Shown here piece after piece: positions 17,898 through 48,092 of a DNA stretch of 64,000 nt (position 1 is its first letter; each line of letters begins with the position of its first letter). The notes beneath the pieces were generated by a model that saw only the letters and a list, made by a program, of their open reading frames with translations, did no database searches and was not told the DNA's origin. The translations under genes were made by a program, and so were the position numbers. The stretch lies in the sequence record LR745206.1. One strand, given 5' to 3'.

Positions 17898-18055
17898 TGG
17901 ATAAAAGTTGGATAAAAATATCAATTAATAGCTACTACGGTACTTATAATTCTGGTAAATCAAACTTTGATATGAAACCACTTTGGGTTAAATATCGTAG
18001 TGGTAAAAGGAAGTCAAAGATAAAAAATATATGGAAGATAGATGGGATGTTATAA
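17897..18055 (+). CDS. 52-aa tagged micro-protein with PolB motif-B-like segment, not in ORF track
   Basis: MDKSWIKISINSYYGTYNSGKSNFDMKPLWVKYRSGKRKSKIKNIWKIDGML; TAATG coupling. Confidence 0.6.
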   Translation: MDKSWIKISINSYYGTYNSGKSNFDMKPLWVKYRSGKRKSKIKNIWKIDGML

Positions 18056-18363
18056 ATGTTGTTTGTATAAAGGGATATAAAACATTGAAAGTTGGTTCCT
18101 CTTATCAGATAAAGGGTCGTGGAAATCTAACATATAATGCTGATCCAGAAGTTGGTGGTAAAAAAGGTCAAGGATATTGTATAGAGGATGGTATGTATGG
18201 GTCTTATAGTGGTAGAACCGATTGGTACCGATTGCCTTATAATGAAAGGATTAAGTGGTATTATTTTACCGAAAAAGAAATGGGTGATTACTTTATAACA
18301 GATAATGAAAATCATATAATATATTTAAGAGATAGAAAAATTAATAGTATAATAAATGATTGA
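18031..18363 (+). CDS. tagged hypothetical protein
   Basis: ends YLRDRKINSIIND. Confidence 0.7.
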   Translation: MEDRWDVINVVCIKGYKTLKVGSSYQIKGRGNLTYNADPEVGGKKGQGYCIEDGMYGSYSGRTDWYRLPYNERIKWYYFTEKEMGDYFITDNENHIIYLRDRKINSIIND

Positions 18364-20829: not shown

Positions 20830-21189
20830 ATGCAAGAAAAAACCGAATTAGACTTAAATAACCCTATCTTTGCCGTTTATGTAAATGTTGGTGGTTTATC
20901 TAGACAGAGAGCTGAGGAAACAATCCAACACTTATCTAAAACTATGGATTGTCATAGTAATGTAACTATGTGGTTTTTCGGATGTGGTAATCTTGGTGAA
21001 AATCAAGAGACAAAAGTGGAGTGTGTTTATGATGGGATGTTGAGAAATAGAAATTCAGAATTAGTTGACTTAATAAAAGAAATAAATACAAGAGTTGATA
21101 TTTTATCAAATTCTAAAGATTTTGAAGATTTTAAATTAAATGTGAGAAATTGGAGATTGGGAGAATTACTAAAAAATGGCGATAACTAA
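20830..21189 (+). CDS. portal clip-like fragment plus tag
   Basis: YVNVGGLSRQRAEETIQHLSKTM versus T4 gp20 [23 protein letters not shown]; ends VRNWRLGELL. Confidence 0.7.
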   Translation: MQEKTELDLNNPIFAVYVNVGGLSRQRAEETIQHLSKTMDCHSNVTMWFFGCGNLGENQETKVECVYDGMLRNRNSELVDLIKEINTRVDILSNSKDFEDFKLNVRNWRLGELLKNGDN

Positions 21190-21556
21190 GAACAAAATAC
21201 AATTATTAGATAATATTCTATCTGTTGAAAAAGAGATGGAAATTGACTATTATTCCTATTGGGATAGTTACGGGTATGATGATTATTATGAAAATGATTA
21301 TTACGAAGATGATAGAGATCCTTGTTGGGGCTATGTTGAATCAATAGAACCTAGTTATGATTTGATAACCAAAGGTCGTGGTAGATTTACATACCAAAAC
21401 CATGCTAGAGTTCTTGGTAAGATGATAGATATGGATACTATTTATTCTAGAGAAGTGTTGAGAGAGAGAAAAATAGATCAAATTCTTGGATTATTGGCAC
21501 CAACTTATATACCGAAAGCAACTATTGGTGATTTTTTTCCAAAAAATAATAATTAA
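21176..21556 (+). CDS. Tyr/Asp-rich tagged protein
   Basis: YDDYYENDYYEDD tract; LRERKIDQILG. Confidence 0.7.
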   Translation: MAITKNKIQLLDNILSVEKEMEIDYYSYWDSYGYDDYYENDYYEDDRDPCWGYVESIEPSYDLITKGRGRFTYQNHARVLGKMIDMDTIYSREVLRERKIDQILGLLAPTYIPKATIGDFFPKNNN

Positions 21557-26834: not shown

Positions 26835-27857
26835 TTATATTTTAGATAATAATTCTGATTTTTTATCTGAGAACTCTTCATCTGTTAATATACCAGCTGA
26901 GTGTAATTCAGATAGTTTTTTTATCAAATCAATAATTTCATCAGACTCATTTTTTAAGATATCTTTAGCTCTTACTGATGTTAGTGTTCCTTTGATGTTA
27001 TCAAATAGTATATCCTTTGTCTCAATTGGTTTAACACTCTCTGGGAAGATTTGTATAATAGTTGAGCTAATATAGTTATCTTCAAACTCCATATCAATTT
27101 CGGTGAATTTTTGAGAAGAAGCTGAACCTTTTTCTACTCTTCCTGTTTCCATACTTGAATTGATTGGTGTCATATCACCACTAGTAAGACTAGTTGGATT
27201 TAATAATGTACCAGTCAAATTACTTACATTAAAATTACCAGCAATAGTATTTGTAGTTGTTCCATAAACTGCTCCGGTTGTTGATGATCCACTATTAAAT
27301 GTTGCGGTTCCGGATGAAACAACAGCATTTAATGATCCATATCCTCCAGTTCCGATAGTTGTTGTACCACCATATACTATTGTATTTGGGTAGTAAGGTT
27401 GATACCAATTTGGATACCAATTTGGATAATAAGTAGGATACCATCTTTCGACTATAACTCTATCAAATCGTTTTTTCCAGTTATCGAGTGTGATAACATC
27501 TTCTTTATAAAAGAAGACTTCTAATAAACCATTTTTCTGAGTTGCTTCTATTGATTCAAGATTAGCTTCAATTTCATATGTACTGAATATGAATTTCTTT
27601 TTGTCATCAACAAAGCAGTCAAGATAGAACCTTTGTCCTGGTTTTAATACTAATCCTGTTTTTGAGATTGATTGACCATTTAATTTGATGTCAGCTAAGA
27701 CACATTCTGTTAGTGGATTAAATAGTTCGATTTCGAATTCGTCTCCATTATTTAAGAAGACTTTTCCTTTTTTAATTGATTTTCTTCCCTTATCTTTGGG
27801 GGAAACAATCCATGCGCTTGGTTTTTTGGCACGGGTACTTGTAGTTTTTGCTACCAT
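26835..27857 (-). CDS. protein with beta-sandwich-like N-terminus and C-terminal SHOCT domain
   Basis: FEIELFNP..IKLNG..LVLKPGQRFYL; ends IKKLSELHSAGILTDEEFSDKKSELLSKI. Confidence 0.7.
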   Translation of the reverse strand: MVAKTTSTRAKKPSAWIVSPKDKGRKSIKKGKVFLNNGDEFEIELFNPLTECVLADIKLNGQSISKTGLVLKPGQRFYLDCFVDDKKKFIFSTYEIEANLESIEATQKNGLLEVFFYKEDVITLDNWKKRFDRVIVERWYPTYYPNWYPNWYQPYYPNTIVYGGTTTIGTGGYGSLNAVVSSGTATFNSGSSTTGAVYGTTTNTIAGNFNVSNLTGTLLNPTSLTSGDMTPINSSMETGRVEKGSASSQKFTEIDMEFEDNYISSTIIQIFPESVKPIETKDILFDNIKGTLTSVRAKDILKNESDEIIDLIKKLSELHSAGILTDEEFSDKKSELLSKI

Positions 27858-28021: not shown

Positions 28022-29188
28022 ATGACAGAAGTAAAAGATTTTGTATTCGAAACGTTTTTAAGATTAACCTCCAAGACTGTTCCTTATGGTCATGAGGATA
28101 ATTTTATGAGACAAGTTAGAAAACTATTCCCGAAAAGAATGGATCAAGATAAGCATGGTAATTATTTTTATAAGGTTGGTGAATCCAAAACAGTTTTTGC
28201 TTCACACCTCGATACCGTTTCCAAAGAATATATTTCAGTTACGCACGTTTTTGATGGTGATACAATAAAAACTGATGGGAAAACAACATTAGGTGCTGAT
28301 GATAAAGCTGGTGTTACAGTTATGTTATGGATGATACAAAATAATGTTCCTGGTTTATACTACTTTTTTATTGGTGAGGAAGTTGGTTGTATTGGATCTG
28401 GATTTGCATCAAAAGATAGTGATTTTGAAAACTATGATAGAATGATTTCATTTGATAGAAGAGGAACTGGTTCTATTATAACTTACCAATCTTCTGGTAG
28501 ATGTTGTTCTGATGATTTTGCTGACGCATTATGTGCTGAGTTGAATATGTTAGGACTAGATTATTCAAAAGATATGGGTGGTGTTTATACTGACTCTGCT
28601 GAGTTTGTTGATGTTATTCCTGAATGTACAAATGTTTCTGTTGGATATTATAAAGAACACACCACAACAGAGAACCAAGATATCAAACACTTAACTGAAT
28701 TAGCCGATGCTTGTGTTCGTGTTAATTGGGAGAATTTACCAACAAAGAGAAATCCAAAGATATATGAGGCAAAACCTTATTCTTCATATAGAAACTATGC
28801 AAGTTCATATAACCCTCCAACTAAGACTTATGGTCTTACTGATGATTGGTATGAGGAAGATGATGATGATTTTGGTGGATTAGAACTTGGTGATGATGGT
28901 GAGTGGGGATATCCGAGACGTGATAAAAGAAAAAGAACAAGACGAGGTAATAATAGAAAATCTAAAACCTTTTATGATACTGGTAATGGGTTGATGGAAA
29001 TTACTTCTTTTAATGAAAAAGAATATAACTCTGATACTGGTGGTGATAAATACAGCTGGATTACAGATAAATTTTTAGATCACGTATTAACAATTGCTGA
29101 TTTGGAAATTATTAAGGAACAATATTTGGATATGGATGTCCAATATGATAAATACTTTTACAACTATTTACTAGAACAAGTTGTTTAA
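28022..29188 (+). CDS. M28/M20-family metallopeptidase
   Basis: SHLDTV, GADDKAG, GEEVG, SFDR, GYYKEH zinc ligands. Confidence 0.8.
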   Translation: MTEVKDFVFETFLRLTSKTVPYGHEDNFMRQVRKLFPKRMDQDKHGNYFYKVGESKTVFASHLDTVSKEYISVTHVFDGDTIKTDGKTTLGADDKAGVTVMLWMIQNNVPGLYYFFIGEEVGCIGSGFASKDSDFENYDRMISFDRRGTGSIITYQSSGRCCSDDFADALCAELNMLGLDYSKDMGGVYTDSAEFVDVIPECTNVSVGYYKEHTTTENQDIKHLTELADACVRVNWENLPTKRNPKIYEAKPYSSYRNYASSYNPPTKTYGLTDDWYEEDDDDFGGLELGDDGEWGYPRRDKRKRTRRGNNRKSKTFYDTGNGLMEITSFNEKEYNSDTGGDKYSWITDKFLDHVLTIADLEIIKEQYLDMDVQYDKYFYNYLLEQVV

Positions 29189-38229: not shown

Positions 38230-40923
38230 ATGGCATCTACCCCACTTTTTAAATCACTTAAACCGAATGGTACATCATTTTATGCTTTTCCTGGTGCGGC
38301 AGAGGATATTTCAGCGGCATATCAGAATTCAAATTATAAAATGTATTTTTCTAAATATGTTTTGATGAATTTACCAAAGCAAAATACAACATTAGGAACA
38401 CAATCAAATCCGATATATTTTGATTTTGAGAATTCGTTTGAAAACTCAGTAAATGCTACACCTGCTTTTAACTATTCTGATGCTATTATAGAATCATTAA
38501 GGAGTTATGTGGCTAACCAAGAAGTTGTTATTAGAGAGAGTAGATTGAATAATACTAAATATTATTACGATACAAATGCTTTAGAAACAACATCTGAAAA
38601 GATATTTTTTAAATGGTGTAAGAAATTAAATATTCTTGATTTCGAACCAGCTATTCCAGAGGATGAATATTTTAGTAATTTACAAGATTTTCAATCAAAT
38701 AATATAAATGATGATGAGTATTTCCCTGAATTTTTATGGAAGGAAAGAGAAGTATCTCCTTGGAACACAAGAATATTTTATGAGACTGCATCTGGTGATC
38801 CATCTCTAATTGGTAAATTAGAGGTTGAATTTGGAGGAACTACAAACTTTAGAGTTGGTGATATTGTTAATATTTATAATGTTAGTAATTCTACAATATA
38901 TACTGACCCATTTCTTGTTGGTTCAGAAACCGAAGATGGGATAAACACAACTATACTTTCTATTATACCATCAGGAGCTACTCAAGGTCAAAGAATTATA
39001 TTTGATATTGATACAAATCTTGGTGCTACAAATGAATTAGATGGGAAAGCTAAATTAGTTTATCATAAATTGATACAATATATTGGTGAGGTAAATGGTA
39101 TTAGTAATGTACAAGAGGCTAATAGATCTTATACCGAAGTTTTTGCTAATATACCAGACCATACAGGACAAACACCTGACATTCTTTTTAGAACATTGGT
39201 TGATGTTAATTATAAACCAAATTTAACATTCCCTATTTTACCTAGTCAATATCAACCAGAGATATTAGGAGCTGAATTGTTTAATTCTCCGATAGTTAGT
39301 ACTCCACAAAATTATCCAGGTTCTTATTTTGGACAATTTGATACACTTGACTTTACATATGTAACCGAAACTGGAGATGATATAAGAAGGAGTGGTGATT
39401 ATTATGGTGTTAATGGTGATATAAATAATCCAGTTGTTGATGGATCTACTATTGATGGTATTACATTAGACTTTAATACAAGTCACTATGTTAAGATGAA
39501 TATACCAAATAGAGTTGTTACTAATTTTGATCAATTTAATGCACTTGAAGTTAATAATGAACCACCTAAAGATTTTGAATACAATGCTATATTATGGTAT
39601 TATACAGTTGAGGATTCTGCTGGTGATTCAAGAACAAATTTATATGGTATTTCATTTCTAGATCACCCTGATAATAATCTAAAAGATGAAGAGGTTAGTT
39701 TGAGGTTCCCTACAATTAAAAAATTGGTTGCTAATGGTGAGCAGGATGGTACATCTTATTCATATAATTTGAATCTTAATTTTAATATAATAAATGAAAA
39801 TACAATTGATGCTTATAATCCGGAAGCTATAAATTCATTATTTAGTATGAACTTATTTAATGATGCTATGAAAAGATTATCATCCACAAATGATAGCTTT
39901 ATCAATATATTAGCTGAGCATTCAGAAATAACTGATGAGATTAATAATATTAGAGGGTTGGTATATACCCAAACAGATATAAGTGTATTGACTGCTAAGA
40001 TTAAAAGTCTTGAAGATTTATTGAGATTATACTCAACTAATCAAATGCAATCAAGTGATACTATTACTGTTAATCAAATACCTGGTAATCCACCAATACT
40101 CACACTAAATAGTATTGATACTCAATATTCTAGAGTTGATAATTACAAATCTACTGATTTATATAATGCTCAAGGTATAATTCCAATAAATGTATCTATT
40201 CCACAGAATAAAAACTTCTTTATCAATTTTATTAATAATGATGAAGTTGAACTTGATTTAGGTAATGATAGATTAACACTTATTTTAGATAGAGATTTAT
40301 ATTATAAGCAGTCTGTTGATGTTTTAATTACTGCTAGTGAATTTTCATCTGAGAATAAGAAATTAGATATTTATATGTCAAGTGATATTGGATCGGTTGA
40401 TGGTTCTACAACAGAAGTTTTAGTAATCGGTGATATTGATTTACCTGTTTACTACAACACATCTTCTCAATTACCAAACTCAGCAGCTGTTTGGAAAGAC
40501 TTTAAATTTGATATTGATTTTGATCAATCACTTAGTTTGATAACTGGTGATAGGATAGAAGTTCCATTTGTTGGAAATACATCAATTATAAGTAATTCGA
40601 TTAAGGTTGGTGATACATTACATATGAATAACTTTTTTGTTGGTACTAGCTCTATATATGATTTCTCTGGTCAATATAAAGTTGATTCTGTTGCTGGTGG
40701 TACTAGTTCTTATGTAACTTTTGATATTAGTACGAATGATGATTTGGTAGCCTATGGAGCATCGACTTCATTACCATTAGAAATACATGGTACATCATCA
40801 ACACTTTTATCAAACATACCATATTTTTCATTAAATAAAGGTAAAAAAATTAGAATTACTAGAGGTAGTAATTCGGATATACTAAACGAGAGATATATTG
40901 TAGAGGTTGACGATATTATATAA
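38230..40923 (+). CDS. 897-aa putative virion structural (baseplate/tail) protein
   Basis: large beta-rich ORF in a structural block. Confidence 0.55.
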   Translation: MASTPLFKSLKPNGTSFYAFPGAAEDISAAYQNSNYKMYFSKYVLMNLPKQNTTLGTQSNPIYFDFENSFENSVNATPAFNYSDAIIESLRSYVANQEVVIRESRLNNTKYYYDTNALETTSEKIFFKWCKKLNILDFEPAIPEDEYFSNLQDFQSNNINDDEYFPEFLWKEREVSPWNTRIFYETASGDPSLIGKLEVEFGGTTNFRVGDIVNIYNVSNSTIYTDPFLVGSETEDGINTTILSIIPSGATQGQRIIFDIDTNLGATNELDGKAKLVYHKLIQYIGEVNGISNVQEANRSYTEVFANIPDHTGQTPDILFRTLVDVNYKPNLTFPILPSQYQPEILGAELFNSPIVSTPQNYPGSYFGQFDTLDFTYVTETGDDIRRSGDYYGVNGDINNPVVDGSTIDGITLDFNTSHYVKMNIPNRVVTNFDQFNALEVNNEPPKDFEYNAILWYYTVEDSAGDSRTNLYGISFLDHPDNNLKDEEVSLRFPTIKKLVANGEQDGTSYSYNLNLNFNIINENTIDAYNPEAINSLFSMNLFNDAMKRLSSTNDSFINILAEHSEITDEINNIRGLVYTQTDISVLTAKIKSLEDLLRLYSTNQMQSSDTITVNQIPGNPPILTLNSIDTQYSRVDNYKSTDLYNAQGIIPINVSIPQNKNFFINFINNDEVELDLGNDRLTLILDRDLYYKQSVDVLITASEFSSENKKLDIYMSSDIGSVDGSTTEVLVIGDIDLPVYYNTSSQLPNSAAVWKDFKFDIDFDQSLSLITGDRIEVPFVGNTSIISNSIKVGDTLHMNNFFVGTSSIYDFSGQYKVDSVAGGTSSYVTFDISTNDDLVAYGASTSLPLEIHGTSSTLLSNIPYFSLNKGKKIRITRGSNSDILNERYIVEVDDII

Positions 40924-40965: not shown

Positions 40966-42123
40966 ATGTCAGTTTGTGGACAATCATTATTCGGAAGTGG
41001 TAGTAATTACATAAAAGTAGCGAATGGATCTTTTTTAGCTATAGAAGGATCTACGATAGCTGAATCATTATTATTATCTGATTTGAGAATGCCTTATAAG
41101 CAATTATTAAAGGGTAGAATAATATTAAAAGCTGGTCAAGAAGATTTTCTATTAAATCATCTAGGTTTAGGTGATAATGCAACATTTTTAGCTATTAAAG
41201 TAACTTATAATCCAAAATCTGTAATTGAAGAGGATAATTATATACAGTGGTCTTTTTATGATGATGTTGAGAGAGTTAATACAATAGCTCAATTATTGGT
41301 ATTAACTGGTAATTCATCTAATAGAATACCTCAACTTTGGCTAACAAATCCAAATAGTAAATATCCAGTAACACTAGATGTTATGGTTGCTGTAATTGAT
41401 GATAATACATTCTTTGAATATAGACCAGTTGTTTATTTTACTGCTCCGGTTACATTAGAAAATGCTGTTTATTCAGGTCCTTATAATACTTCACTTGGTA
41501 CTAATTTTGGTATAACCATACCAAGTATTAATAACTTTGTTGGATATGATATTAATGATTTGAGAACAGAGATTGTCGATCATGTTGTTGAGTCAAATGG
41601 TTTATTATTGAGTACAACTGCTAGTAATTATTTACTTTATGATATTGATAGTAATCCAATTAATTCATTTACACTATCTGGCACATATTCTATGTTATTT
41701 GATATAACAGATTCATTGAATAATTCAATTGATCCAGCTGATAATGTTGAAATAATATACAATGCAACATACACACCGGTTGTTTTCTTTACTCCTGATG
41801 TTTATTTGATAGGTTCTACTGCATCACCAGTTAATACATTATTAGGTGATACATTTGGTGCAACAATATCATTAACTATGTCAGTTTATGGTGGTACTGT
41901 TAGTGTGTTGGATTTAGCTGGTGTTTTAGTTGACCATGTTGAAGAAGCTAATGGTGTTACTTTCTCAGCTACAGCTAGTAATTATATATTATACGATTAT
42001 TCAAATCTAGTTATTAATGGTATAACAATATCGGGTACTTATTCATTAGGATTTAATATAACAGATTCATTTGGTACACTTGATCCGAATAAAATAGTAG
42101 GCGTGTCATTCACAGGAGTATGA
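40966..42123 (+). CDS. putative structural protein with duplicated C-terminal domain
   Basis: two copies of PVV.FT..VDHV.E.NG..TASNY.LYD..SGTYS..F.ITDS; late motif 40934-40943. Confidence 0.6.
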   Translation: MSVCGQSLFGSGSNYIKVANGSFLAIEGSTIAESLLLSDLRMPYKQLLKGRIILKAGQEDFLLNHLGLGDNATFLAIKVTYNPKSVIEEDNYIQWSFYDDVERVNTIAQLLVLTGNSSNRIPQLWLTNPNSKYPVTLDVMVAVIDDNTFFEYRPVVYFTAPVTLENAVYSGPYNTSLGTNFGITIPSINNFVGYDINDLRTEIVDHVVESNGLLLSTTASNYLLYDIDSNPINSFTLSGTYSMLFDITDSLNNSIDPADNVEIIYNATYTPVVFFTPDVYLIGSTASPVNTLLGDTFGATISLTMSVYGGTVSVLDLAGVLVDHVEEANGVTFSATASNYILYDYSNLVINGITISGTYSLGFNITDSFGTLDPNKIVGVSFTGV

Positions 42124-43082
42124 TAATTAAAAAGTATATAAAATTTATTAAAGAAAATTTAATGCAATTTAATTCATTAGGTGAATGGGTTGACTCATTA
42201 TCTGATGATGATTATGTTATGAATATTGTTAATAGATATTTGAAAGATATTGATCCGGATATTGAATTGGAAAATGCGGTAAATCTTTTGGATGATAATG
42301 AACAAGCTGATATTAGATCACAGATATCTGAATATTTAGAAAAAGGTATTCAGGAAAAAGATCCAAATGTATTAGCATCCACTGAAACTGATATATTAGA
42401 AAATGTTCAAGAAATAACTGTTGCTGGTAAAGGAGTATTTAACTCTTTTCTTAAATCACTAACTGCCCTTGGTCAAAAAGAATCTAAGCCAAATTATGAT
42501 AGATGTCCAGAAGATTTTTTAGTATTTTATCACTATCAAAATCTAAATTCTAATGATGTTAAGGTTGTTTTTAGTAGATTTAAATCACTTTTGAGATATT
42601 CTGATATGATTGATTATGGTAAGAATGAAGTTAGTCTTTATTTTGGTATTAAATGTGATGGTCAGTTTGAATATGGTATATCTTATGATAGTTTATCACC
42701 AATGGGTCAATTTAAATTATCACAATCATCTATTAAGTGGTTAGTTCAATTGGAATCTAAATCATCTAGATCACTTAAAAAGGAATTGGTTAACTTAACA
42801 TACAATGATATATTATTATTTGGTAAGATTAAAATGGATATGAAGGATTTTAATCCTGGTTATCATGAGAAGAGATCTTATCCTACTATAACTGATAGAG
42901 TTATCTCATTTGGGTATTATGGTGTTGGTAGATGGGATAATGGTAAATTGGATGAGGGTGAATATATGAATATTAAAAATAATTTTACTACTTGGATTCT
43001 TACTAAGAAATGGGGAAGTAAAGTTTTGATAAGTGTTAAGCCTCAATCATTTTGGTTATACATACATATAAAATTGAAATAA
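42120..43082 (+). CDS. hypothetical protein, putative head-packaged
   Basis: MIIKKYIKFIKEN start. Confidence 0.65.
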   Translation: MIIKKYIKFIKENLMQFNSLGEWVDSLSDDDYVMNIVNRYLKDIDPDIELENAVNLLDDNEQADIRSQISEYLEKGIQEKDPNVLASTETDILENVQEITVAGKGVFNSFLKSLTALGQKESKPNYDRCPEDFLVFYHYQNLNSNDVKVVFSRFKSLLRYSDMIDYGKNEVSLYFGIKCDGQFEYGISYDSLSPMGQFKLSQSSIKWLVQLESKSSRSLKKELVNLTYNDILLFGKIKMDMKDFNPGYHEKRSYPTITDRVISFGYYGVGRWDNGKLDEGEYMNIKNNFTTWILTKKWGSKVLISVKPQSFWLYIHIKLK

Positions 43083-43083
43083 T

Positions 43084-43374
43084 ATGAAATATTTAAGAAA
43101 ATATAATGAATCAAATGGAGAGCAAGATTTAGATTTTGTTTTAGCTAAGATTAAGGAAGAATTTCCTATTGATAAGGTTAAAGAAACTTATGATAAAGAA
43201 GTTGATGAGTGGTCAGAAGATTACACTAATAGTGGTAATGGTGAGGCACAAGACGTTATCTTAAATCAAATGATTGGATGGTTCGAGTTGAAACATTCTA
43301 GCCTTAGTGATGAGTTATTTGAAGAAGTTTATAATAAACTACAAGAGGAATATGAATTCCTAAACATTGATTAA
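43084..43374 (+). CDS. acidic small protein, putative head-packaged
   Basis: MKYLRKYNES start. Confidence 0.65.
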   Translation: MKYLRKYNESNGEQDLDFVLAKIKEEFPIDKVKETYDKEVDEWSEDYTNSGNGEAQDVILNQMIGWFELKHSSLSDELFEEVYNKLQEEYEFLNID

Positions 43375-43406
43375 TTTTTTTCTATAATAAGAAAAAAATT
43401 AACTTA

Positions 43407-43880
43407 ATGACTCAAAGTTCTAAAGAAGATATTTTTAAAAAATGGGCACCTATTATAGAATCTATGGGTGTTACTGGATCAAAAGCAGATTGGATGTCTC
43501 ATTATGCTGAAATGCACTCTATCAATGAGAATAATATACAAATATCATCAACACAATCTACTTCTAATTTTCCAAATTTGTTACCAATCGCTAAAAAGAT
43601 TGCAGCTCAAACAGTTGGACTAAATTTAGTAGCTGTTAAACCAATTGGTGGTAATTCAACTGATGAGTTAGAAAGAATAAAAAGTGAGATTAAATCTGAA
43701 AACCGCGATAGAAAAATCGATTCTATTACAGATGATAAAGAATTTGAGGAAATGAAGGTTGAGGATCATCCAGACTATGAAACTGGTTTACCTAGTGGTA
43801 AATTATTTTACATGGATTATCAATATGGATCTACACCAACACATAAGAAGACAAGAAGAAGTAAAAAGAAGAAGAAATGA
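43407..43880 (+). CDS. major capsid N-terminal-like fragment with internal tag
   Basis: MTQSSKEDIFKKWAPIIE versus T4 gp23 MTIKTKAELLNKWKPLLE; LVAVKPIGG..PSGKLFYMDYQYG; NRDRKIDSI inserted. Confidence 0.75.
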   Translation: MTQSSKEDIFKKWAPIIESMGVTGSKADWMSHYAEMHSINENNIQISSTQSTSNFPNLLPIAKKIAAQTVGLNLVAVKPIGGNSTDELERIKSEIKSENRDRKIDSITDDKEFEEMKVEDHPDYETGLPSGKLFYMDYQYGSTPTHKKTRRSKKKKK

Positions 43881-44131
43881 AGAAACTTAAAATGCAAAAA
43901 GATTATTGGTTTCCTAGTCCAGATTATGTTAATAGATTTGGTCGTAAAAGAAGTATTGCTAAAATATTTGACCTTGAGTATGACGAATCTGATTTAGTAA
44001 ATTCCTCACAAATTCATTGGAGTAGTACCACTGCTCAACCAAGAATGAAATTTGTAATACCTATTGGTGATATGAAAGATAAACCAAGTATTGCTAAAAG
44101 AATCAAGGATTTGATAAAAAAATTCAAATAA
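43877..44131 (+). CDS. portal-like fragments flanking a tag
   Basis: QKDYWFPS, GRKRSIAKIF, RMKFVIPIGDM..KDLIKKFK. Confidence 0.6.
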   Translation: MKKLKMQKDYWFPSPDYVNRFGRKRSIAKIFDLEYDESDLVNSSQIHWSSTTAQPRMKFVIPIGDMKDKPSIAKRIKDLIKKFK

Positions 44132-44160: not shown

Positions 44161-44490
44161 ATGATTAAGATTTATTTAATTTGTGCTGAAATAGGTGGTG
44201 AGAAGATGTATAAAATAGGTTATACAAAAAGAACAATTGAACAAAGAATAAAGGAATTTAAGACTGGTAATGCGTCCGAGTTCACTATAATAGATTCTTT
44301 TCAATCAGATTGGGGTACTAAAATAGAGGCACAATTACATAAGAGATTTAATCATAAAAAGGTTAATGGTGAGTGGTTTAAGTTAGATGAATCTGATATA
44401 AATAAGTTTCAAGATATGTGTAGTTTAATACATAATAATTTAGAAATTGTCTCTAAAACGACATATTATTTAGATAGAGGAGACTTTTAA
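44161..44490 (+). CDS. GIY-YIG-like T5orf172/MUG113 nuclease
   Basis: YKIGYTK..RIKE..IEAQLHKRF..GEWF. Confidence 0.8.
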   Translation: MIKIYLICAEIGGEKMYKIGYTKRTIEQRIKEFKTGNASEFTIIDSFQSDWGTKIEAQLHKRFNHKKVNGEWFKLDESDINKFQDMCSLIHNNLEIVSKTTYYLDRGDF

Positions 44491-44529: not shown

Positions 44530-44802
44530 ATGGGATCAATGAAAGAAATTAGTATTAGAGAATATATTTCTAATATAGACTTCAAACGAGATGATTGGAA
44601 ACTTTCAGTTATGAAAGAAGATATGAGAAAATTCTTAGGTGAAGAACCAGGTATCGATATCATTTACAAAAAAGATGTAATGATAAACGAAACAACACAA
44701 GAAGCTCAAGAATATGTTGATATCAATAAAGTTCAAATAGTTTTTTTTGATACTGATGAAAAATTTAAGAAACTAGAGTTTCTGATAGATGATAATGTTT
44801 AA
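44530..44802 (+). CDS. hypothetical protein
   Basis: 90-aa ORF in operon. Confidence 0.6.
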   Translation: MGSMKEISIREYISNIDFKRDDWKLSVMKEDMRKFLGEEPGIDIIYKKDVMINETTQEAQEYVDINKVQIVFFDTDEKFKKLEFLIDDNV

Positions 44803-45016
44803 AATGGACTTAAAAAATTACTACCTAGATCTTAAAAAAGTTTCTGAATTGGAATTAGAAGAAGATAGAAAAATTATACATGACTATTATAGGGATATGT
44901 TGAGTTATAATTATGAAAAAAGAGAAGAAATCGCAATTTCTATGTTTAATACACTATATAGTGGTGACTATTTAAAAGAAGTTCGTGATGAAAAAATTGA
45001 TCAAATACTTTCTTAA
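44789..45016 (+). CDS. tagged hypothetical protein
   Basis: ends VRDEKIDQILS; start may be a few codons later. Confidence 0.65.
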   Translation: MIMFKMDLKNYYLDLKKVSELELEEDRKIIHDYYRDMLSYNYEKREEIAISMFNTLYSGDYLKEVRDEKIDQILS

Positions 45017-45333
45017 TGGAAATAAAAGCTGATATATTAGATTACTTGGGTAAAATAGATGATGGTATTATTGTTTTACTTTCATTATCATATGATGGTG
45101 TGTATTATGAGGGAACACTATATTATAAGGATAAGTTAGTTGCTTTAACACCAGATGAAGTTCTTGAAGAGAAATTGGGATCTGTTATAGAAGATTGGGA
45201 AGGTTATAATGATTTAATGTTAGAAATACTTAAAAAAGTTGTTCCTTATGATGAGATGATTACTAGGGTTGATGATATTGATATGAATCAATATGGTATT
45301 GAACTAGGTAATAGTGACGAATCAATCGATTAA
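45016..45333 (+). CDS. acidic hypothetical protein
   Basis: 105-aa ORF, TAATG coupling. Confidence 0.6.
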   Translation: MEIKADILDYLGKIDDGIIVLLSLSYDGVYYEGTLYYKDKLVALTPDEVLEEKLGSVIEDWEGYNDLMLEILKKVVPYDEMITRVDDIDMNQYGIELGNSDESID

Positions 45334-46394: not shown

Positions 46395-48092
46395 ATGCTT
46401 ATAAGTGAAATAGGAATTAGAGGATATAAATCATTTGGAAATAACGAACAAATATTAAAACTAAATACCGAAAGAGGTGAACTATTACTTCTTGTTGGTA
46501 ACAATGGTAATGGTAAATCTTCATTACTAGAATCTTTTGAATACGTATTATACGGTAAAGTTAAATCAGGTAAAACAAAAAAATGGCATAAATTATCCAC
46601 GTTACCTAATAGGATAAATGGTGAGATGTTAAATCGAATAAAATTTGTTGCTAGTGGAACTGATGTTGAGATTAAAAGAGGTATATCACCTGGTATATTG
46701 GAGTTAACTGAAAATGGTCTTGTTAATGAAAGAGCTGGTAAATCCAACTTAGATGATCATATTGAAAAATATATTGGATTGGATATCGAAACATTCAAAT
46801 CTTTTATATCAATGTCTATAAATGATTTCAAAAACTTTATATCATTAACAAATGAGGAGAAAAAATTATTACTTGATAAGCTATTTAACCTAGAAGTCAT
46901 TAATATTCTAAACGGTATATTAAAAGACATCAATAAAAATAATAAAATTAGATTAGCCTCTTTGGATTCTGAGATAAGAACACTCGAAGAATCAATTGAT
47001 TCTATAAAAAGATCTATTGCTAATGCTATCGAAAGAGAAAAGGAAAATCTTCAACAAGAAATAGATGTTCTTGTAGAAGATATGAATTCTAAAAAAGAAG
47101 ATTATGCAGCATTAAAAGACAAGGTTGAGAAGATAAAGGAAAAAGAGAAAATATTATCCGATGAAATGGATAATGAAAAGAAACAATATATCAATACACA
47201 GAATGATATCAGAAATGTACAAAAGGAGATAGATCTTTATGATTCTGGTAAATGTCCAACTTGTTCAACTGATTTTAAATCAACACATTTTGCTGATTTA
47301 AGAACATCATTAATTGAAAAGAAACAAGGATATGAAAATATTAAAATTGAAATTGAAGAAAATATTAAATCTGTTAAATCTAAACAAGTTAAATTAAAGG
47401 AAATTGGTGATGGTACCACTTCCTCTTTTACGGATTTGAGTTATCTATTGAGAAACTATAAAACTAAGATAGATGAGTTATCAAGAAAGAAGAGTAAAGA
47501 AAATGGTAAAGAATCAGTTAATGTTCAAGAGTTTCAAAAAACAATTGAAGAATTAGAGGGTAAGAAATCATTTAGTCATGATAATATTTCTATCAGTAAA
47601 GAGAAAGAACTTTATTATAAAGAGTTAAATAGAATTTTTGGTGAAGATGGTGTTAAGAAAGCAATCATTGCTGGTATTATAAAACCAATAAACCACTTCA
47701 TAAGAGAAAATATTAAAACGATGGGTTTACCTTTTGGTGTTCAATTAGATGAGACTTTCACTGCTGAGATTAAAATGTTGGGAACACCTATTGAACACGA
47801 TTCATTATCAACTGGTGAGACAAAGAAGATTAATATAGCTATATTAATAGCTTACTTGAAATTAATTAGAACTAAAAAACACATCAATATACTCTTCTTA
47901 GATGAGGTCTTTGCCTCAATTGATATCGAGGGTATAGATTCTATATTGGGTCTCTTAAAATCATTTGCAAATGACTACAATATCAATATATTTGTTGTTC
48001 ACCACGCAATTCTTAGTCAGGAGATGTTTGATAGAATTATAAAAATAAACAAAGATGTTTTTTCATCAATAGAGGAAGTAGAATATGAATGA
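46395..48092 (+). CDS. SbcC/Rad50/T4 gp46-like recombination ATPase
   Basis: GNNGNGKS Walker A, coiled coil with CPTC hook, LSTGE signature, LFLDE Walker B. Confidence 0.9.
   Translation: MLISEIGIRGYKSFGNNEQILKLNTERGELLLLVGNNGNGKSSLLESFEYVLYGKVKSGKTKKWHKLSTLPNRINGEMLNRIKFVASGTDVEIKRGISPGILELTENGLVNERAGKSNLDDHIEKYIGLDIETFKSFISMSINDFKNFISLTNEEKKLLLDKLFNLEVINILNGILKDINKNNKIRLASLDSEIRTLEESIDSIKRSIANAIEREKENLQQEIDVLVEDMNSKKEDYAALKDKVEKIKEKEKILSDEMDNEKKQYINTQNDIRNVQKEIDLYDSGKCPTCSTDFKSTHFADLRTSLIEKKQGYENIKIEIEENIKSVKSKQVKLKEIGDGTTSSFTDLSYLLRNYKTKIDELSRKKSKENGKESVNVQEFQKTIEELEGKKSFSHDNISISKEKELYYKELNRIFGEDGVKKAIIAGIIKPINHFIRENIKTMGLPFGVQLDETFTAEIKMLGTPIEHDSLSTGETKKINIAILIAYLKLIRTKKHINILFLDEVFASIDIEGIDSILGLLKSFANDYNINIFVVHHAILSQEMFDRIIKINKDVFSSIEEVEYE

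What the first reader, a model, noticed from the sequence alone, without database searches (positions are those of the whole stretch)
43407..43880. Major capsid N-terminal fragment with the tag inserted inside a conserved capsid motif
It begins like T4 gp23 (MTQSSKEDIFKKWAPIIE versus MTIKTKAELLNKWKPLLE) and keeps a SINE protease-like site. The gp23-type stretch LVAVKPIGG / PSGKLFYMDYQYG (T4 ICGVQPMNS-PTGQVFALRAVYG) is split by an insert of about 45 aa carrying NRDRKIDSI, then the protein stops with a basic tail. Insertion at a loop, keeping both flanks, suggests selection to preserve the capsid-like fold while displaying the tag: the strongest single argument that these are purposeful mimics rather than debris.
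Basis: partly seen in the sequence, partly recalled or inferred. Interest (0 to 1): 0.87.

Follow-up and report, generated by a model that had tools for sequence, protein, structure and literature searches.

The report
Small capsid-protein paralogue with conserved insert
A 157-residue protein of a 635-kb "megaphage" is an intact, selected copy of only the first ~125 residues of the phage's own T4-type major capsid protein, split by a 46-residue helical insertion that is the best-conserved part of a family with hundreds of relatives. It is real and not debris, but its role (most likely a head-assembly accessory) is inferred, not shown.

Summary
ORF 43407-43880 (+) encodes 157 aa homologous to residues 6-127 of the same phage's gp23-family major capsid protein (MCP; LR745206.1, about 89 kb upstream): BLASTP E 7e-22, profile-profile 99.7% probability. 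Relative to the MCP it has a 46-aa insertion at the turn between two conserved strands, with both flanks kept. It stops just before the MCP's E-loop-equivalent linker, so it lacks the HK97-fold body.

It is not debris. There are 364 protein clusters of similar length, the ORFs in relatives are intact, dN/dS is 0.11-0.28, and the gene order around it is conserved.

The insert is not an add-on. It is the most conserved and most widely kept module. Some relatives lack the propeptide-like part, some lack the N-arm-like part, and two phages join an insert-like module to a scaffold-repeat-like tail.

A short core motif of the insert recurs in three other small ORFs of the window, against 0.006 expected.

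Best reading (0.45): a head-assembly accessory that docks through MCP-derived N-terminal elements and is trimmed by the prohead protease. The immune-decoy idea is untested and gets little support. Both structure models were too poor to use. Direct likeness to T4 gp23 is weak (E 0.88).

The parts
43407..43880 (+). Whole gene: 157-aa small paralogue of the MCP N-terminus (stop codon included)
   Evidence: ORF list and sequence. 364 homologous clusters of about 140-170 aa. dN/dS 0.11-0.28.
43407..43529 (+). Residues 1-41: propeptide-like segment homologous to MCP residues ~6-44, ending in S-I-N-E
   Evidence: BLASTP and hhalign to the own MCP. Two helices in the AF2 model, at low confidence. Sites with a hydrophobic residue two positions before Glu fall at three positions homologous to invariant MCP sites E20, E35 and E44. 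Weak N-terminus-to-N-terminus match to T4 gp23, E 0.88.
43530..43574 (+). Residues 42-56: short Ser/Thr-rich linker replacing the MCP's longer Gly/Ala/Pro-rich stretch and its GSGD motif
   Evidence: Alignment A2. Highest dN/dS of all segments.
43575..43649 (+). Residues 57-81: N-arm-like segment plus first strand (NLLPIAKKIAAQTVGLNLVAVKPIG), equivalent to MCP 87-111
   Evidence: hhalign. The MCP profile aligns this stretch to T4 gp23 ~94-117. T4 N-arm and Met98 literature. It lies in the most conserved part of the MCP's first quarter.
43650..43787 (+). Residues 82-127: family-defining 46-aa insertion, a predicted long helix
   Evidence: Gap of 46 columns in hhalign. Helix 85-109 has the best pLDDT, 76-81. 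Lowest dN/dS, 0.02-0.29. Detected in 127 of 150 representatives by a segment profile. Absent from every full-length MCP examined.
43701..43727 (+). Residues 99-107, NRDRKIDSI: the 'tag' core within the insert
   Evidence: N99, R100, K103 and I104 are invariant in alignment A1. The motif pattern occurs 4 times in 74 window ORFs against 0.0055 expected.
43788..43832 (+). Residues 128-142: second strand (LPSGKLFYMDYQYGS), equivalent to MCP 112-127
   Evidence: hhalign. P129, D137 and Y140 match MCP-invariant P113, D121 and Y124.
43833..43877 (+). Residues 143-157: basic C-terminal tail (TPTHKKTRRSKKKKK)
   Evidence: Present in the window clade and in several distant relatives; replaced by a neutral tail in others.
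43371..43402 (+). Hairpin (13-bp stem, 6-nt loop) ending 4 nt before the start codon, in the spacer after the upstream gene
   Evidence: RNA fold -9.3 kcal/mol, z -5.6, 0 of 200 shuffles as stable. A hairpin sits at the same place in 16 of 21 related loci, with different stem letters. RNAalifold on a MAFFT alignment found no consensus structure.
43084..43374 (+). Upstream neighbour: 96-aa acidic protein, conserved next to the target
   Evidence: Synteny in most related loci. No family hits.
43877..44131 (+). Downstream 84-aa ORF whose ATG overlaps the target's stop (ATGA)
   Evidence: Sequence. Homologues in close relatives and in LR756502.

Best explanation
It is a head-assembly accessory protein that arose by duplication of the 5' end of the phage's gp23-type major capsid protein gene.

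Shown: it keeps the MCP's propeptide-like helices, the N-arm-like segment and the first beta-hairpin. It has a strongly conserved 46-residue insertion, predicted to be helical, at the hairpin turn. It is under purifying selection.

Inferred: in T4 gp23 these N-terminal elements lie inside the prohead against the scaffolding core, and later lace neighbouring subunits together. The small protein is therefore likely to dock on the scaffold core or on the MCP lattice through the same contacts. The prohead protease would remove its propeptide at the site homologous to the MCP's. That would leave a mature product (N-arm, hairpin, helical insert) matching the naturally short relatives. The product would stay as a minor head component. 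The insert would be the working surface, and the basic tail would contact DNA or the acidic scaffold.
For: - Homology is to exactly MCP 6-127.
- The own MCP is a Pfam Gp23 member. Its profile aligns this region to T4 gp23 5-134.
- T4 literature: the first 65 residues are cleaved off. Residues 66-105 lie inside the prohead at the scaffold and later form the N-fist and N-arm. Residues 132-160 are the E-loop-equivalent linker.
- Nine of ten MCP-invariant residues in the N-arm and hairpin are retained.
- Protease-type sites fall at the three positions homologous to invariant sites in the MCP propeptide.
- The gene upstream of the MCP is a protease-scaffold fusion with weak S77/S80 protease matches, strongest in the LR756504 homologue.
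- Short relatives inside long contigs start about where a cleaved long form would.
- In two other phages an insert-like module is joined to a scaffold-repeat-like tail (BLASTP E 1e-5). It may also be joined to pieces resembling MCP 475-520, but that evidence is weak. Where the module's partners can be recognised, they are head-assembly parts.
- The scaffold protein has a long acidic stretch that a poly-basic tail could bind.
- Purifying selection and hundreds of intact relatives.
Against: - There is no virion proteome, no expression data and no usable structure model: pLDDT 57 for the protein and 43 for the MCP.
- The gene lies about 89 kb from the protease-scaffold-MCP module. It sits in a conserved block with unknown genes, a T5orf172-domain gene and an SbcC-like ATPase.
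- It lacks the AATATATA motif found upstream of the MCP, protease and about 30 window genes.
- The MCP-like parts are dispensable in many relatives.
- Sister megaphages (LR756501/03/04, LR756500, Lak) have gp23-type MCPs but no such protein. It is therefore not needed to build such capsids.
- Only 10 of 22 members keep a hydrophobic residue two positions before the Glu at the SINE position.
Confidence: 0.45

Rival explanations
1. It is a non-structural regulator of head assembly. The free N-terminal fragment competes with the MCP for scaffold sites, for neighbouring-subunit contacts or for the prohead protease. In this way it would tune the timing, size or processing of the head, and it would not end up in the virion.
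For: It shares the same homology to the scaffold-contacting and subunit-lacing MCP elements, and the same protease-type sites. T4 mutations in the gp23 N-terminal region alter head length, according to PMC9546572. The gene lies outside the head module and has a different upstream element with a hairpin at the start codon, which would suit tightly dosed expression.
Against: The insert, not the competing MCP-like surface, is the most constrained part. Relatives that lack the propeptide-like or the N-arm-like part would be poor competitors. The conserved basic tail is not explained.
Confidence: 0.2
2. The protein works outside the capsid. The insert plus the last strand is an autonomous module, for example for binding nucleic acid or another protein. 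The MCP-derived pieces are evolutionary raw material with no capsid-related role today.
For: The insert is the most widely kept and most constrained module. A 74-aa relative consists of the insert alone. The invariant polar residues N99, R100 and K103 lie on one predicted helix. The neighbours include DNA-metabolism-type genes: a T5orf172-domain gene and an SbcC-like ATPase.
Against: Nine of ten MCP-invariant residues are retained in the N-arm and hairpin, and dN/dS there is 0.17-0.37. This argues that those segments are still used. An insert-like module is fused to a scaffold-repeat-like tail in other phages.
Confidence: 0.2
3. It is a decoy or modulator aimed at host factors that recognise the MCP's conserved N-terminal quarter. 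The known example is the T4 Gol region, which binds EF-Tu and triggers the Lit protease. The fragment would bind the sensor or EF-Tu, and the insertion would prevent activation.
For: The retained N-arm and strand stretch is the most conserved part of the MCP's first quarter. [quoted passage not shown] The insertion interrupts this stretch.
Against: A decoy should conserve the mimicked epitope best. Here the epitope-like part is less conserved than in the MCP and is lost in some relatives, while the insert is conserved. There is no defence-related family hit and no host is known. The exact Gol residue numbers are from my memory only, so the mapping is approximate.
Confidence: 0.1
4. It is debris: a decaying remnant of a partial MCP gene duplication, perhaps carried by the neighbouring nuclease-like gene.
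For: It is a truncated copy lying next to a T5orf172/MUG113-domain gene.
Against: - There are 364 clusters at 90% identity and 514 representatives at 50% identity.
- The ORF is intact in all 23 viral-contig loci.
- dN/dS is 0.11-0.28.
- Synteny is conserved, including the T5orf172-domain gene.
- There is no recent gene conversion with the MCP.
Confidence: 0.02

Closest known systems
T4 gp23 / gp24 (major capsid protein and its vertex paralogue; Pfam Gp23 PF07068)
   Same: It derives from a gp23-family MCP gene by duplication within a phage genome. It shares the propeptide-like N-terminus, the N-arm-like segment and the first hairpin with its parent MCP.
   Different: gp24 is a full-length HK97-fold paralogue that forms pentons. 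This protein covers only the first ~127 MCP residues, carries a 46-aa insertion, gives no Pfam Gp23 hit of its own, and cannot form a shell subunit.
T4 capsid-targeted core and internal proteins (IPI-III, Alt, gp67, gp68), which are loaded through an N-terminal targeting peptide and trimmed by the gp21 protease
   Same: It is a small protein with an N-terminal segment that plausibly addresses it to the scaffold core. That segment is followed by a protease-type site at a position homologous to the MCP's. A basic tail would suit contact with DNA or the core.
   Different: Here the putative address is a copy of the MCP's own propeptide, not a short dedicated peptide. No sequence relation to the T4 core proteins came back from any search. 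Packaging and cleavage are not shown.
N-terminal delta/scaffolding domains of HK97- and T5-type capsid proteins
   Same: It is an MCP N-terminal region whose job, in the parent protein, is to contact the assembly core and be removed.
   Different: Those domains are part of the MCP chain. This one is a separate gene product that also keeps mature-protein elements (N-arm, hairpin) and a new insertion.
T4 Gol peptide (the gp23 segment that binds EF-Tu and activates the Lit protease)
   Same: It contains the equivalent of the most conserved stretch of the MCP's first quarter.
   Different: It is a free-standing gene product and the stretch is interrupted by the insertion. No EF-Tu or Lit link has been tested. 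Conservation is lower than in the MCP.
Paralogue families of processed head proteins in giant phages (phiKZ, SPN3US)
   Same: Giant-phage heads contain many extra proteins that are cleaved by the prohead protease, and some of them form paralogue families (titles and abstracts of PMC5694885 and PMC10052503).
   Different: Those families are not reported as fragments of the MCP. No sequence relation was found here.

Membership tests
Gp23-type major capsid protein family (Pfam PF07068) | The protein itself matches the family profile | tested here: not met
   0 Pfam families at E <= 10. 0 PHROGs. T4 gp23 only at E 0.88 in a PDB profile search.
Gp23-type major capsid protein family (Pfam PF07068) | Significant homology to a bona fide member | tested here: met
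   The own MCP hits PF07068 at E 1.8e-26. The small protein against that MCP gives BLASTP E 7e-22 and hhalign 99.66%, E 2.3e-25.
Gp23-type major capsid protein family (Pfam PF07068) | Complete HK97-fold body (E-loop or I-domain linkers, P-domain spine helix, A domain) | tested here: not met
   The alignment ends at MCP residue 127 of 560. This corresponds to T4 gp23 ~134, the start of the I-domain linker at 132-160.
T4-type capsid-targeted, protease-trimmed core/internal proteins | N-terminal targeting segment followed by a prohead-protease site | tested here: inconclusive
   The propeptide-like segment and the Glu sites are homologous to invariant MCP sites. The motif at the SINE position is complete in only 10 of 22 members. 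Protease specificity in this phage is unknown.
T4-type capsid-targeted, protease-trimmed core/internal proteins | Physically present in proheads or virions, and cleaved | not testable with these tools
   No proteomic or structural data exist for these uncultured phages.
Gol-type EF-Tu-binding capsid segment | Equivalent of the most conserved N-terminal-quarter stretch of gp23 | tested here: met
   Residues 57-81 and 128-142 align to MCP 87-127, which holds 10 of the 46 columns invariant among 8 diverse MCPs; 14 of the 46 lie in MCP 80-124. These residues align to T4 gp23 ~94-134. The exact Gol coordinates are from memory only.
Gol-type EF-Tu-binding capsid segment | Binds EF-Tu or triggers a Lit-type protease | not testable with these tools
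   No host and no binding data. No PADLOC hit for the protein or its neighbours other than the T5orf172-domain gene.
Pseudogene / decaying duplicate | Stops or frameshifts in relatives, with dN/dS near 1 | tested here: not met
   The ORF is intact in 23 of 23 viral-contig loci. 364 clusters of similar length. dN/dS 0.11-0.28 in the window's clade.

The most novel reading that the evidence does not exclude
Megaphages of this clade may have a modular head-loading system.

The proposal is that one conserved helical module, with the core NRDRKIDSI in the window's protein, is grafted onto pieces of head-assembly proteins. In the window's family the piece is the MCP N-terminus. In two other phages it is a scaffold repeat. 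MCP C-terminal strands may also be used, but that evidence is weak. These grafted proteins would act as adaptors anchored in the prohead.

Unrelated small proteins that end in the short version of the motif would then be cargo, recruited to the adaptors by helix-helix pairing and packaged with the DNA. Three such ORFs are in the window and more are in related loci.

This would be a second, independently evolved capsid-targeting code besides the N-terminal targeting peptide of T4.
Probability: 0.15. Interest if true: 0.85.

Novelty: new variant of a known kind. Interest (0 to 1): 0.6.

Why it matters
Nothing is known about how phages with genomes above 600 kb build and fill their heads, and none has been cultured.

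This is a widespread, selected gene made from the scaffold-contacting and subunit-lacing end of the capsid protein plus a new conserved module. It gives a concrete, sequence-defined handle on accessory head components in these phages.

It also shows that capsid and scaffold genes are being broken into reusable pieces. If the recurring short motif proves to be a docking code, it would explain how many small orphan proteins of megaphages are addressed.

If instead the fragment acts on host factors that read the conserved capsid N-terminus, it would be a new kind of counter-defence.

Either way, the family can now be annotated as "MCP N-terminal paralogue with conserved insertion" instead of "hypothetical".

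Tried and rejected
- **Direct family searches of the small protein.** Pfam, PHROGs, NCBIfam and PADLOC gave nothing.
- **PDB profile search.** Only non-significant hits came back, among them T4 gp23 at E 0.88.
- **Structure prediction of the small protein (22 sequences).** pLDDT was 57; only the insert helix was moderately confident. A Foldseek search of it was meaningless.
- **Structure prediction of the MCP (21 sequences, 76-87% identical).** pLDDT was 42.7, so the insertion point could not be placed in 3D. The Foldseek search was meaningless. I relied instead on a weak profile alignment to T4 gp23 (conditional E 2.8e-4) together with published T4 residue ranges.
- **Gene conversion with the own MCP.** Rejected. 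Nucleotide matches are short and no better to the own MCP than to a foreign one.
- **Insert derived from the prohead protease N-terminal motif.** The window-like letters NRNERI in the protease looked similar to the insert core. Rejected: hhalign probability 0.27%.
- **The other three tag-bearing window ORFs as fragments of larger structural proteins.** There is no evidence for this. Two have no relatives in the phage collection. The insert profile matches all three only over 9-11 residues.
- **SHOCT-like nature of the tag.** No Pfam hit.
- **Covariation in the upstream hairpin.** RNAalifold found no consensus on the MAFFT alignment, which is out of register. Only single-sequence folds support the hairpin.
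- **Bacterial and archaeal genomes.** No relatives found.
- **Neighbouring genes.** No known function apart from the T5orf172-domain gene and the SbcC-like ATPase.

Full report
**1. What is there**

ORF 43407-43880 (+) runs from ATG to TGA and encodes 157 aa. The window has no N and is 28.8% G+C. It is bases 248001-312000 of LR745206.1, a 634,780-bp uncultured phage. This is one of the "Mahaphage" megaphages of Al-Shayeb et al. 2020, which are predicted to infect Bacteroidetes (PMC7162821). According to PMC9723777 it came from a subsurface sample in Japan.

**2. It is a paralogue of the phage's own major capsid protein**

A tblastn search of the phage collection found full-length relatives only in LR745206 itself and in LR756502 (55% identity). 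In LR756501/03, LR756504 and LR756500 only the N-terminal ~80-115 residues matched, at 34-36% identity. Those partial matches are the starts of 550-608-aa proteins that follow a protease-scaffold fusion gene. Those tested hit Pfam Gp23, so they are the major capsid proteins (MCPs).

The window phage's own MCP is L004:3992-5674, which is LR745206.1 200752-202434, about 89 kb upstream of the window gene. It is 560 aa and hits Pfam Gp23 at E 1.8e-26, with MCP 86-538 matching profile positions 6-350.

The small protein against its own MCP gives BLASTP E 7e-22, with 41% identity over residues 6-88. A 22-member family alignment against an 8-member MCP alignment gives 99.66% probability and E 2.3e-25, with small-protein residues 5-142 aligned to MCP 6-127.

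Relative to the MCP, the small protein differs in three ways:
- It lacks about 28 residues of a Gly/Ala/Pro-rich linker, including a GSGD motif that is invariant in MCPs.
- It has 46 extra residues (82-127) between MCP P111 and G112.
- It ends 15 residues after the equivalent of MCP 127.

Nine of the ten MCP-invariant columns between MCP L89 and Y124 are identical in the small protein.

The direct likeness to T4 gp23 is much weaker. The family profile finds T4 gp23 in the PDB only at E 0.88, with residues 1-44 against 1-47. The small protein has no Pfam or PHROG hit.

**3. Which parts of the capsid protein are kept**

The MCP profile matches T4 gp23 at E 1.1e-5 overall. Its weak N-terminal domain alignment (conditional E 2.8e-4) puts MCP profile positions 7-127 on gp23 residues 5-134. 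Published T4 structures give these ranges:
- Residues 1-65 are cleaved off by the prohead protease.
- Residues 66-91 form the N-fist.
- The N-arm follows, and Met98 lies in it.
- Residues 66-105 are disordered and lie inside the unexpanded head at the scaffold. They later move outside and lace subunits together.
- L106 is the first ordered residue.
- Residues 132-160 are an I-domain linker that stands in for the HK97 E-loop (PMC9546572, PMC9958956, PMC7136217).

By this mapping the small protein equals the propeptide, the N-arm and the first hairpin, without the N-fist-like linker. It stops where the E-loop-equivalent linker begins. It cannot have the HK97-fold body.

My attempt to check this in 3D failed. 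The MCP model had pLDDT 42.7 and the small-protein model 56.9. In the latter only the insert helix (85-109) reached 76-81. Fold searches with both models were meaningless.

**4. It is not debris**

- There are 364 clusters (at 90% identity) of about 140-170 aa with E <= 0.01.
- There are 514 representatives (at 50% identity) with E <= 0.001, and 235 with E <= 1e-10.
- No relatives were found in 185,579 bacterial and archaeal species genomes.
- All 23 loci found in viral contigs (27-483 kb) have intact ORFs.
- Whole-gene dN/dS is 0.11-0.28 in the window's clade. The insert has the lowest values (0.02-0.29) and the linker the highest. A second clade gives 0.4-0.75 on few substitutions.
- There is no sign of recent gene conversion with the MCP gene.
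- Gene order is conserved in most loci. In window coordinates it runs: 38230-40923, 40966-42123, 42120-43082, 43084-43374, the target, (43877-44131), a T5orf172-domain gene at 44161-44490, 44530-44802, 44789-45016, 45016-45333, and an SbcC-like ATPase at 46395-48092.

**5. The insert is the core of the family**

In the 22-member alignment the invariant columns N99, R100, K103, I104, K111 and E115 lie in the insert. Relatives are modular:
- Some lack the propeptide-like part. Three examples sit inside long contigs. Among the 150 best representatives, 79 show N-arm plus insert without the propeptide, against 41 with it. Some of these short sequences may be contig-end fragments.
- Some lack the N-arm-like part.
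- Some have the insert before rather than after the V-x-P strand.
- One is a tandem duplicate of 250 aa.
- One is the insert alone, at 74 aa.

A segment profile detected the insert in 127 of the 150 representatives. No protein longer than 250 aa appears among those 150, so no full-length MCP carries the insert. The basic tail occurs in the window's clade and in several distant members, and is replaced in others.

**6. The 'tag'**

I searched with the pattern R-[DE]-[RKE]-K-I-[DENQ]-x-[IL], which was derived after seeing the hits. It occurs four times in 74 window ORFs (20,477 aa). Within-protein shuffling gives 0.0055 expected, and 0 of 2000 shuffles reach four.

The four sites are:
- the target, where the motif is internal;
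- 18031-18363, at the C-terminus;
- 21176-21556, near the C-terminus;
- 44789-45016, at the C-terminus.

In the family of 44789-45016 the C-terminal motif is kept in seven divergent syntenic homologues. A profile of the whole insert matches the other three ORFs only over 9-11 residues, at E 0.008, 0.75 and 1.1. What is shared is therefore a short motif, not the whole module.

Related loci hold more small proteins that end in the motif. Two of them (L019 9944-10324 and L022 9112-9447) join an insert-like module to a tail that resembles the repeats of the scaffold protein. L022 9112-9447 matches the L004 scaffold at BLASTP E 1e-5.

Two further proteins have pieces next to the module that weakly resemble MCP 475-520. 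BLASTP gives E 0.002 and 0.021. hhalign gives E 0.006 and 1.3e-4, with probabilities of 6% and 54%. This is suggestive only.

**7. Protease site**

Sites with a hydrophobic residue two positions before a Glu are the specificity I recall for the T4 gp21 protease. This rests on established knowledge and was not tested here. Such sites occur in all 21 MCPs at E20, E35 and E44. They occur at the homologous positions E18, E32 and E41 in 16, 13 and 10 of 22 small proteins.

The gene before the MCP is a 707-aa protease-scaffold fusion. Its match to Pfam Peptidase_S77 is weak (E 0.005). The LR756504 homologue scores better, with S80 at the gathering threshold and S77 at E 1e-4. The Tenacibaculum phage PTm1 homologue is annotated "prohead core scaffolding protein and protease".

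**8. Regulatory context**

A motif AATATATA sits 11-35 nt upstream of about 30 window genes and of the MCP and protease-scaffold genes. It does not sit upstream of the target.

The target instead has a hairpin that ends 4 nt before its ATG (43371-43402). It folds at -9.3 kcal/mol with z -5.6. A hairpin with other stem letters is found at the same place in 16 of 21 related loci. RNAalifold on a MAFFT alignment did not recover it.

**9. Interpretation**

- **Best supported (0.45).** It is a head-assembly accessory that uses MCP-derived N-terminal elements to dock on the scaffold core or the MCP lattice. It would be trimmed like the MCP and would present the conserved helical insert. Paralogy, the retained elements, selection and modularity are shown. 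Docking, cleavage and location in the virion are inferred.
- **Rivals.** A non-incorporated assembly regulator (0.2). A non-capsid function of the insert module (0.2). A decoy or modulator for host factors that read the conserved capsid N-terminus, such as the T4 Gol/EF-Tu/Lit case (0.1; PMC3014915). Debris (0.02).
- **Against the decoy idea.** The mimicked stretch is less conserved than the insert and is lost in some relatives.
- **Against any essential structural role.** Sister megaphages with gp23-type MCPs lack the gene.

**10. Novelty**

I found no description of a free-standing, conserved MCP N-terminal paralogue in the literature searches I ran. No family library holds it. I rate it a new variant of a known kind: a capsid-protein paralogue or minor head protein.

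**11. Slips**

Noticed in passing
window 18031-18363, 21176-21556, 44789-45016 (all + strand): Three other small ORFs carry the same short motif as the target's insert core, at or near their C-termini. That makes 4 hits against 0.0055 expected. In the 44789-45016 family the C-terminal motif is conserved in 7 divergent homologues. The first two ORFs have no relatives in the phage collection.
   Followed up: partly
L019 9944-10324; L022 9112-9447: In two distant relatives' loci, small proteins of 126 and 111 aa join an insert-like module to a tail resembling the repeats of the prohead scaffold protein (BLASTP of L022 9112-9447 against the L004 scaffold, E 1e-5). Both lie 3-4 kb downstream of the target homologue.
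   Followed up: partly
L019 5893-6645; protein P0268: Two composite relatives exist: a 250-aa tandem form and a 236-aa form. Their first halves put an insert-like module next to a piece that weakly resembles MCP residues 475-520 (E 0.002-0.02 by BLASTP; hhalign probability 6% and 54%). P0268 also holds a stretch weakly like the window's 84-aa downstream ORF (E 0.002).
   Followed up: partly
window 43371-43402: A stable A/U-rich hairpin ends 4 nt before the target's start codon (z -5.6). Hairpins with different stem letters sit at the same place in 16 of 21 related loci. Whether it is a terminator of the upstream genes or a translational or stability element is unknown.
   Followed up: partly
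window, e.g. 4897, 14677, 24299, 37292, 40937, 44150, 53674(-), 58502(-); also L004 upstream of 1786 and 3992: The motif AATATATA lies 11-35 nt upstream of about 30 genes on both strands, and of the MCP and protease-scaffold genes. It is a candidate phage promoter element and is absent upstream of the target.
   Followed up: partly
window 43407-43538 versus L033 and L036: Synonymous divergence in the first 44 codons (dS 0.04-0.09) is several-fold lower than in the rest of the gene (0.2-1.0) between close relatives. This hints at a nucleotide-level constraint or at recent recombination of the 5' end.
   Followed up: no
window 43877-44131: An 84-aa ORF starts at an ATG overlapping the target's stop (ATGA). 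It has a homologue in LR756502, displaced to after the T5orf172-domain gene (E 3e-6).
   Followed up: partly
window 44161-44490; 46395-48092; 26835-27857(-); 28022-29188: Recognisable neighbours: a T5orf172/MUG113-domain protein (it also matches PADLOC models PDC-S57 and PD-Lambda-1), an SbcC/Rad50-like ATPase, a protein with a C-terminal SHOCT domain, and an M28-peptidase-like protein.
   Followed up: no
L004 5748-6137 (LR745206.1, just after the MCP gene): A 129-aa protein with an NFACT-R RNA-binding domain (E 1.5e-16) is encoded immediately downstream of the major capsid protein gene.
   Followed up: no
LR745206.1, outside the window: A tblastn search with a related MCP reports three matching places in this genome: the MCP, the small protein and a third place that I did not locate. 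The third may be a vertex-protein paralogue.
   Followed up: no
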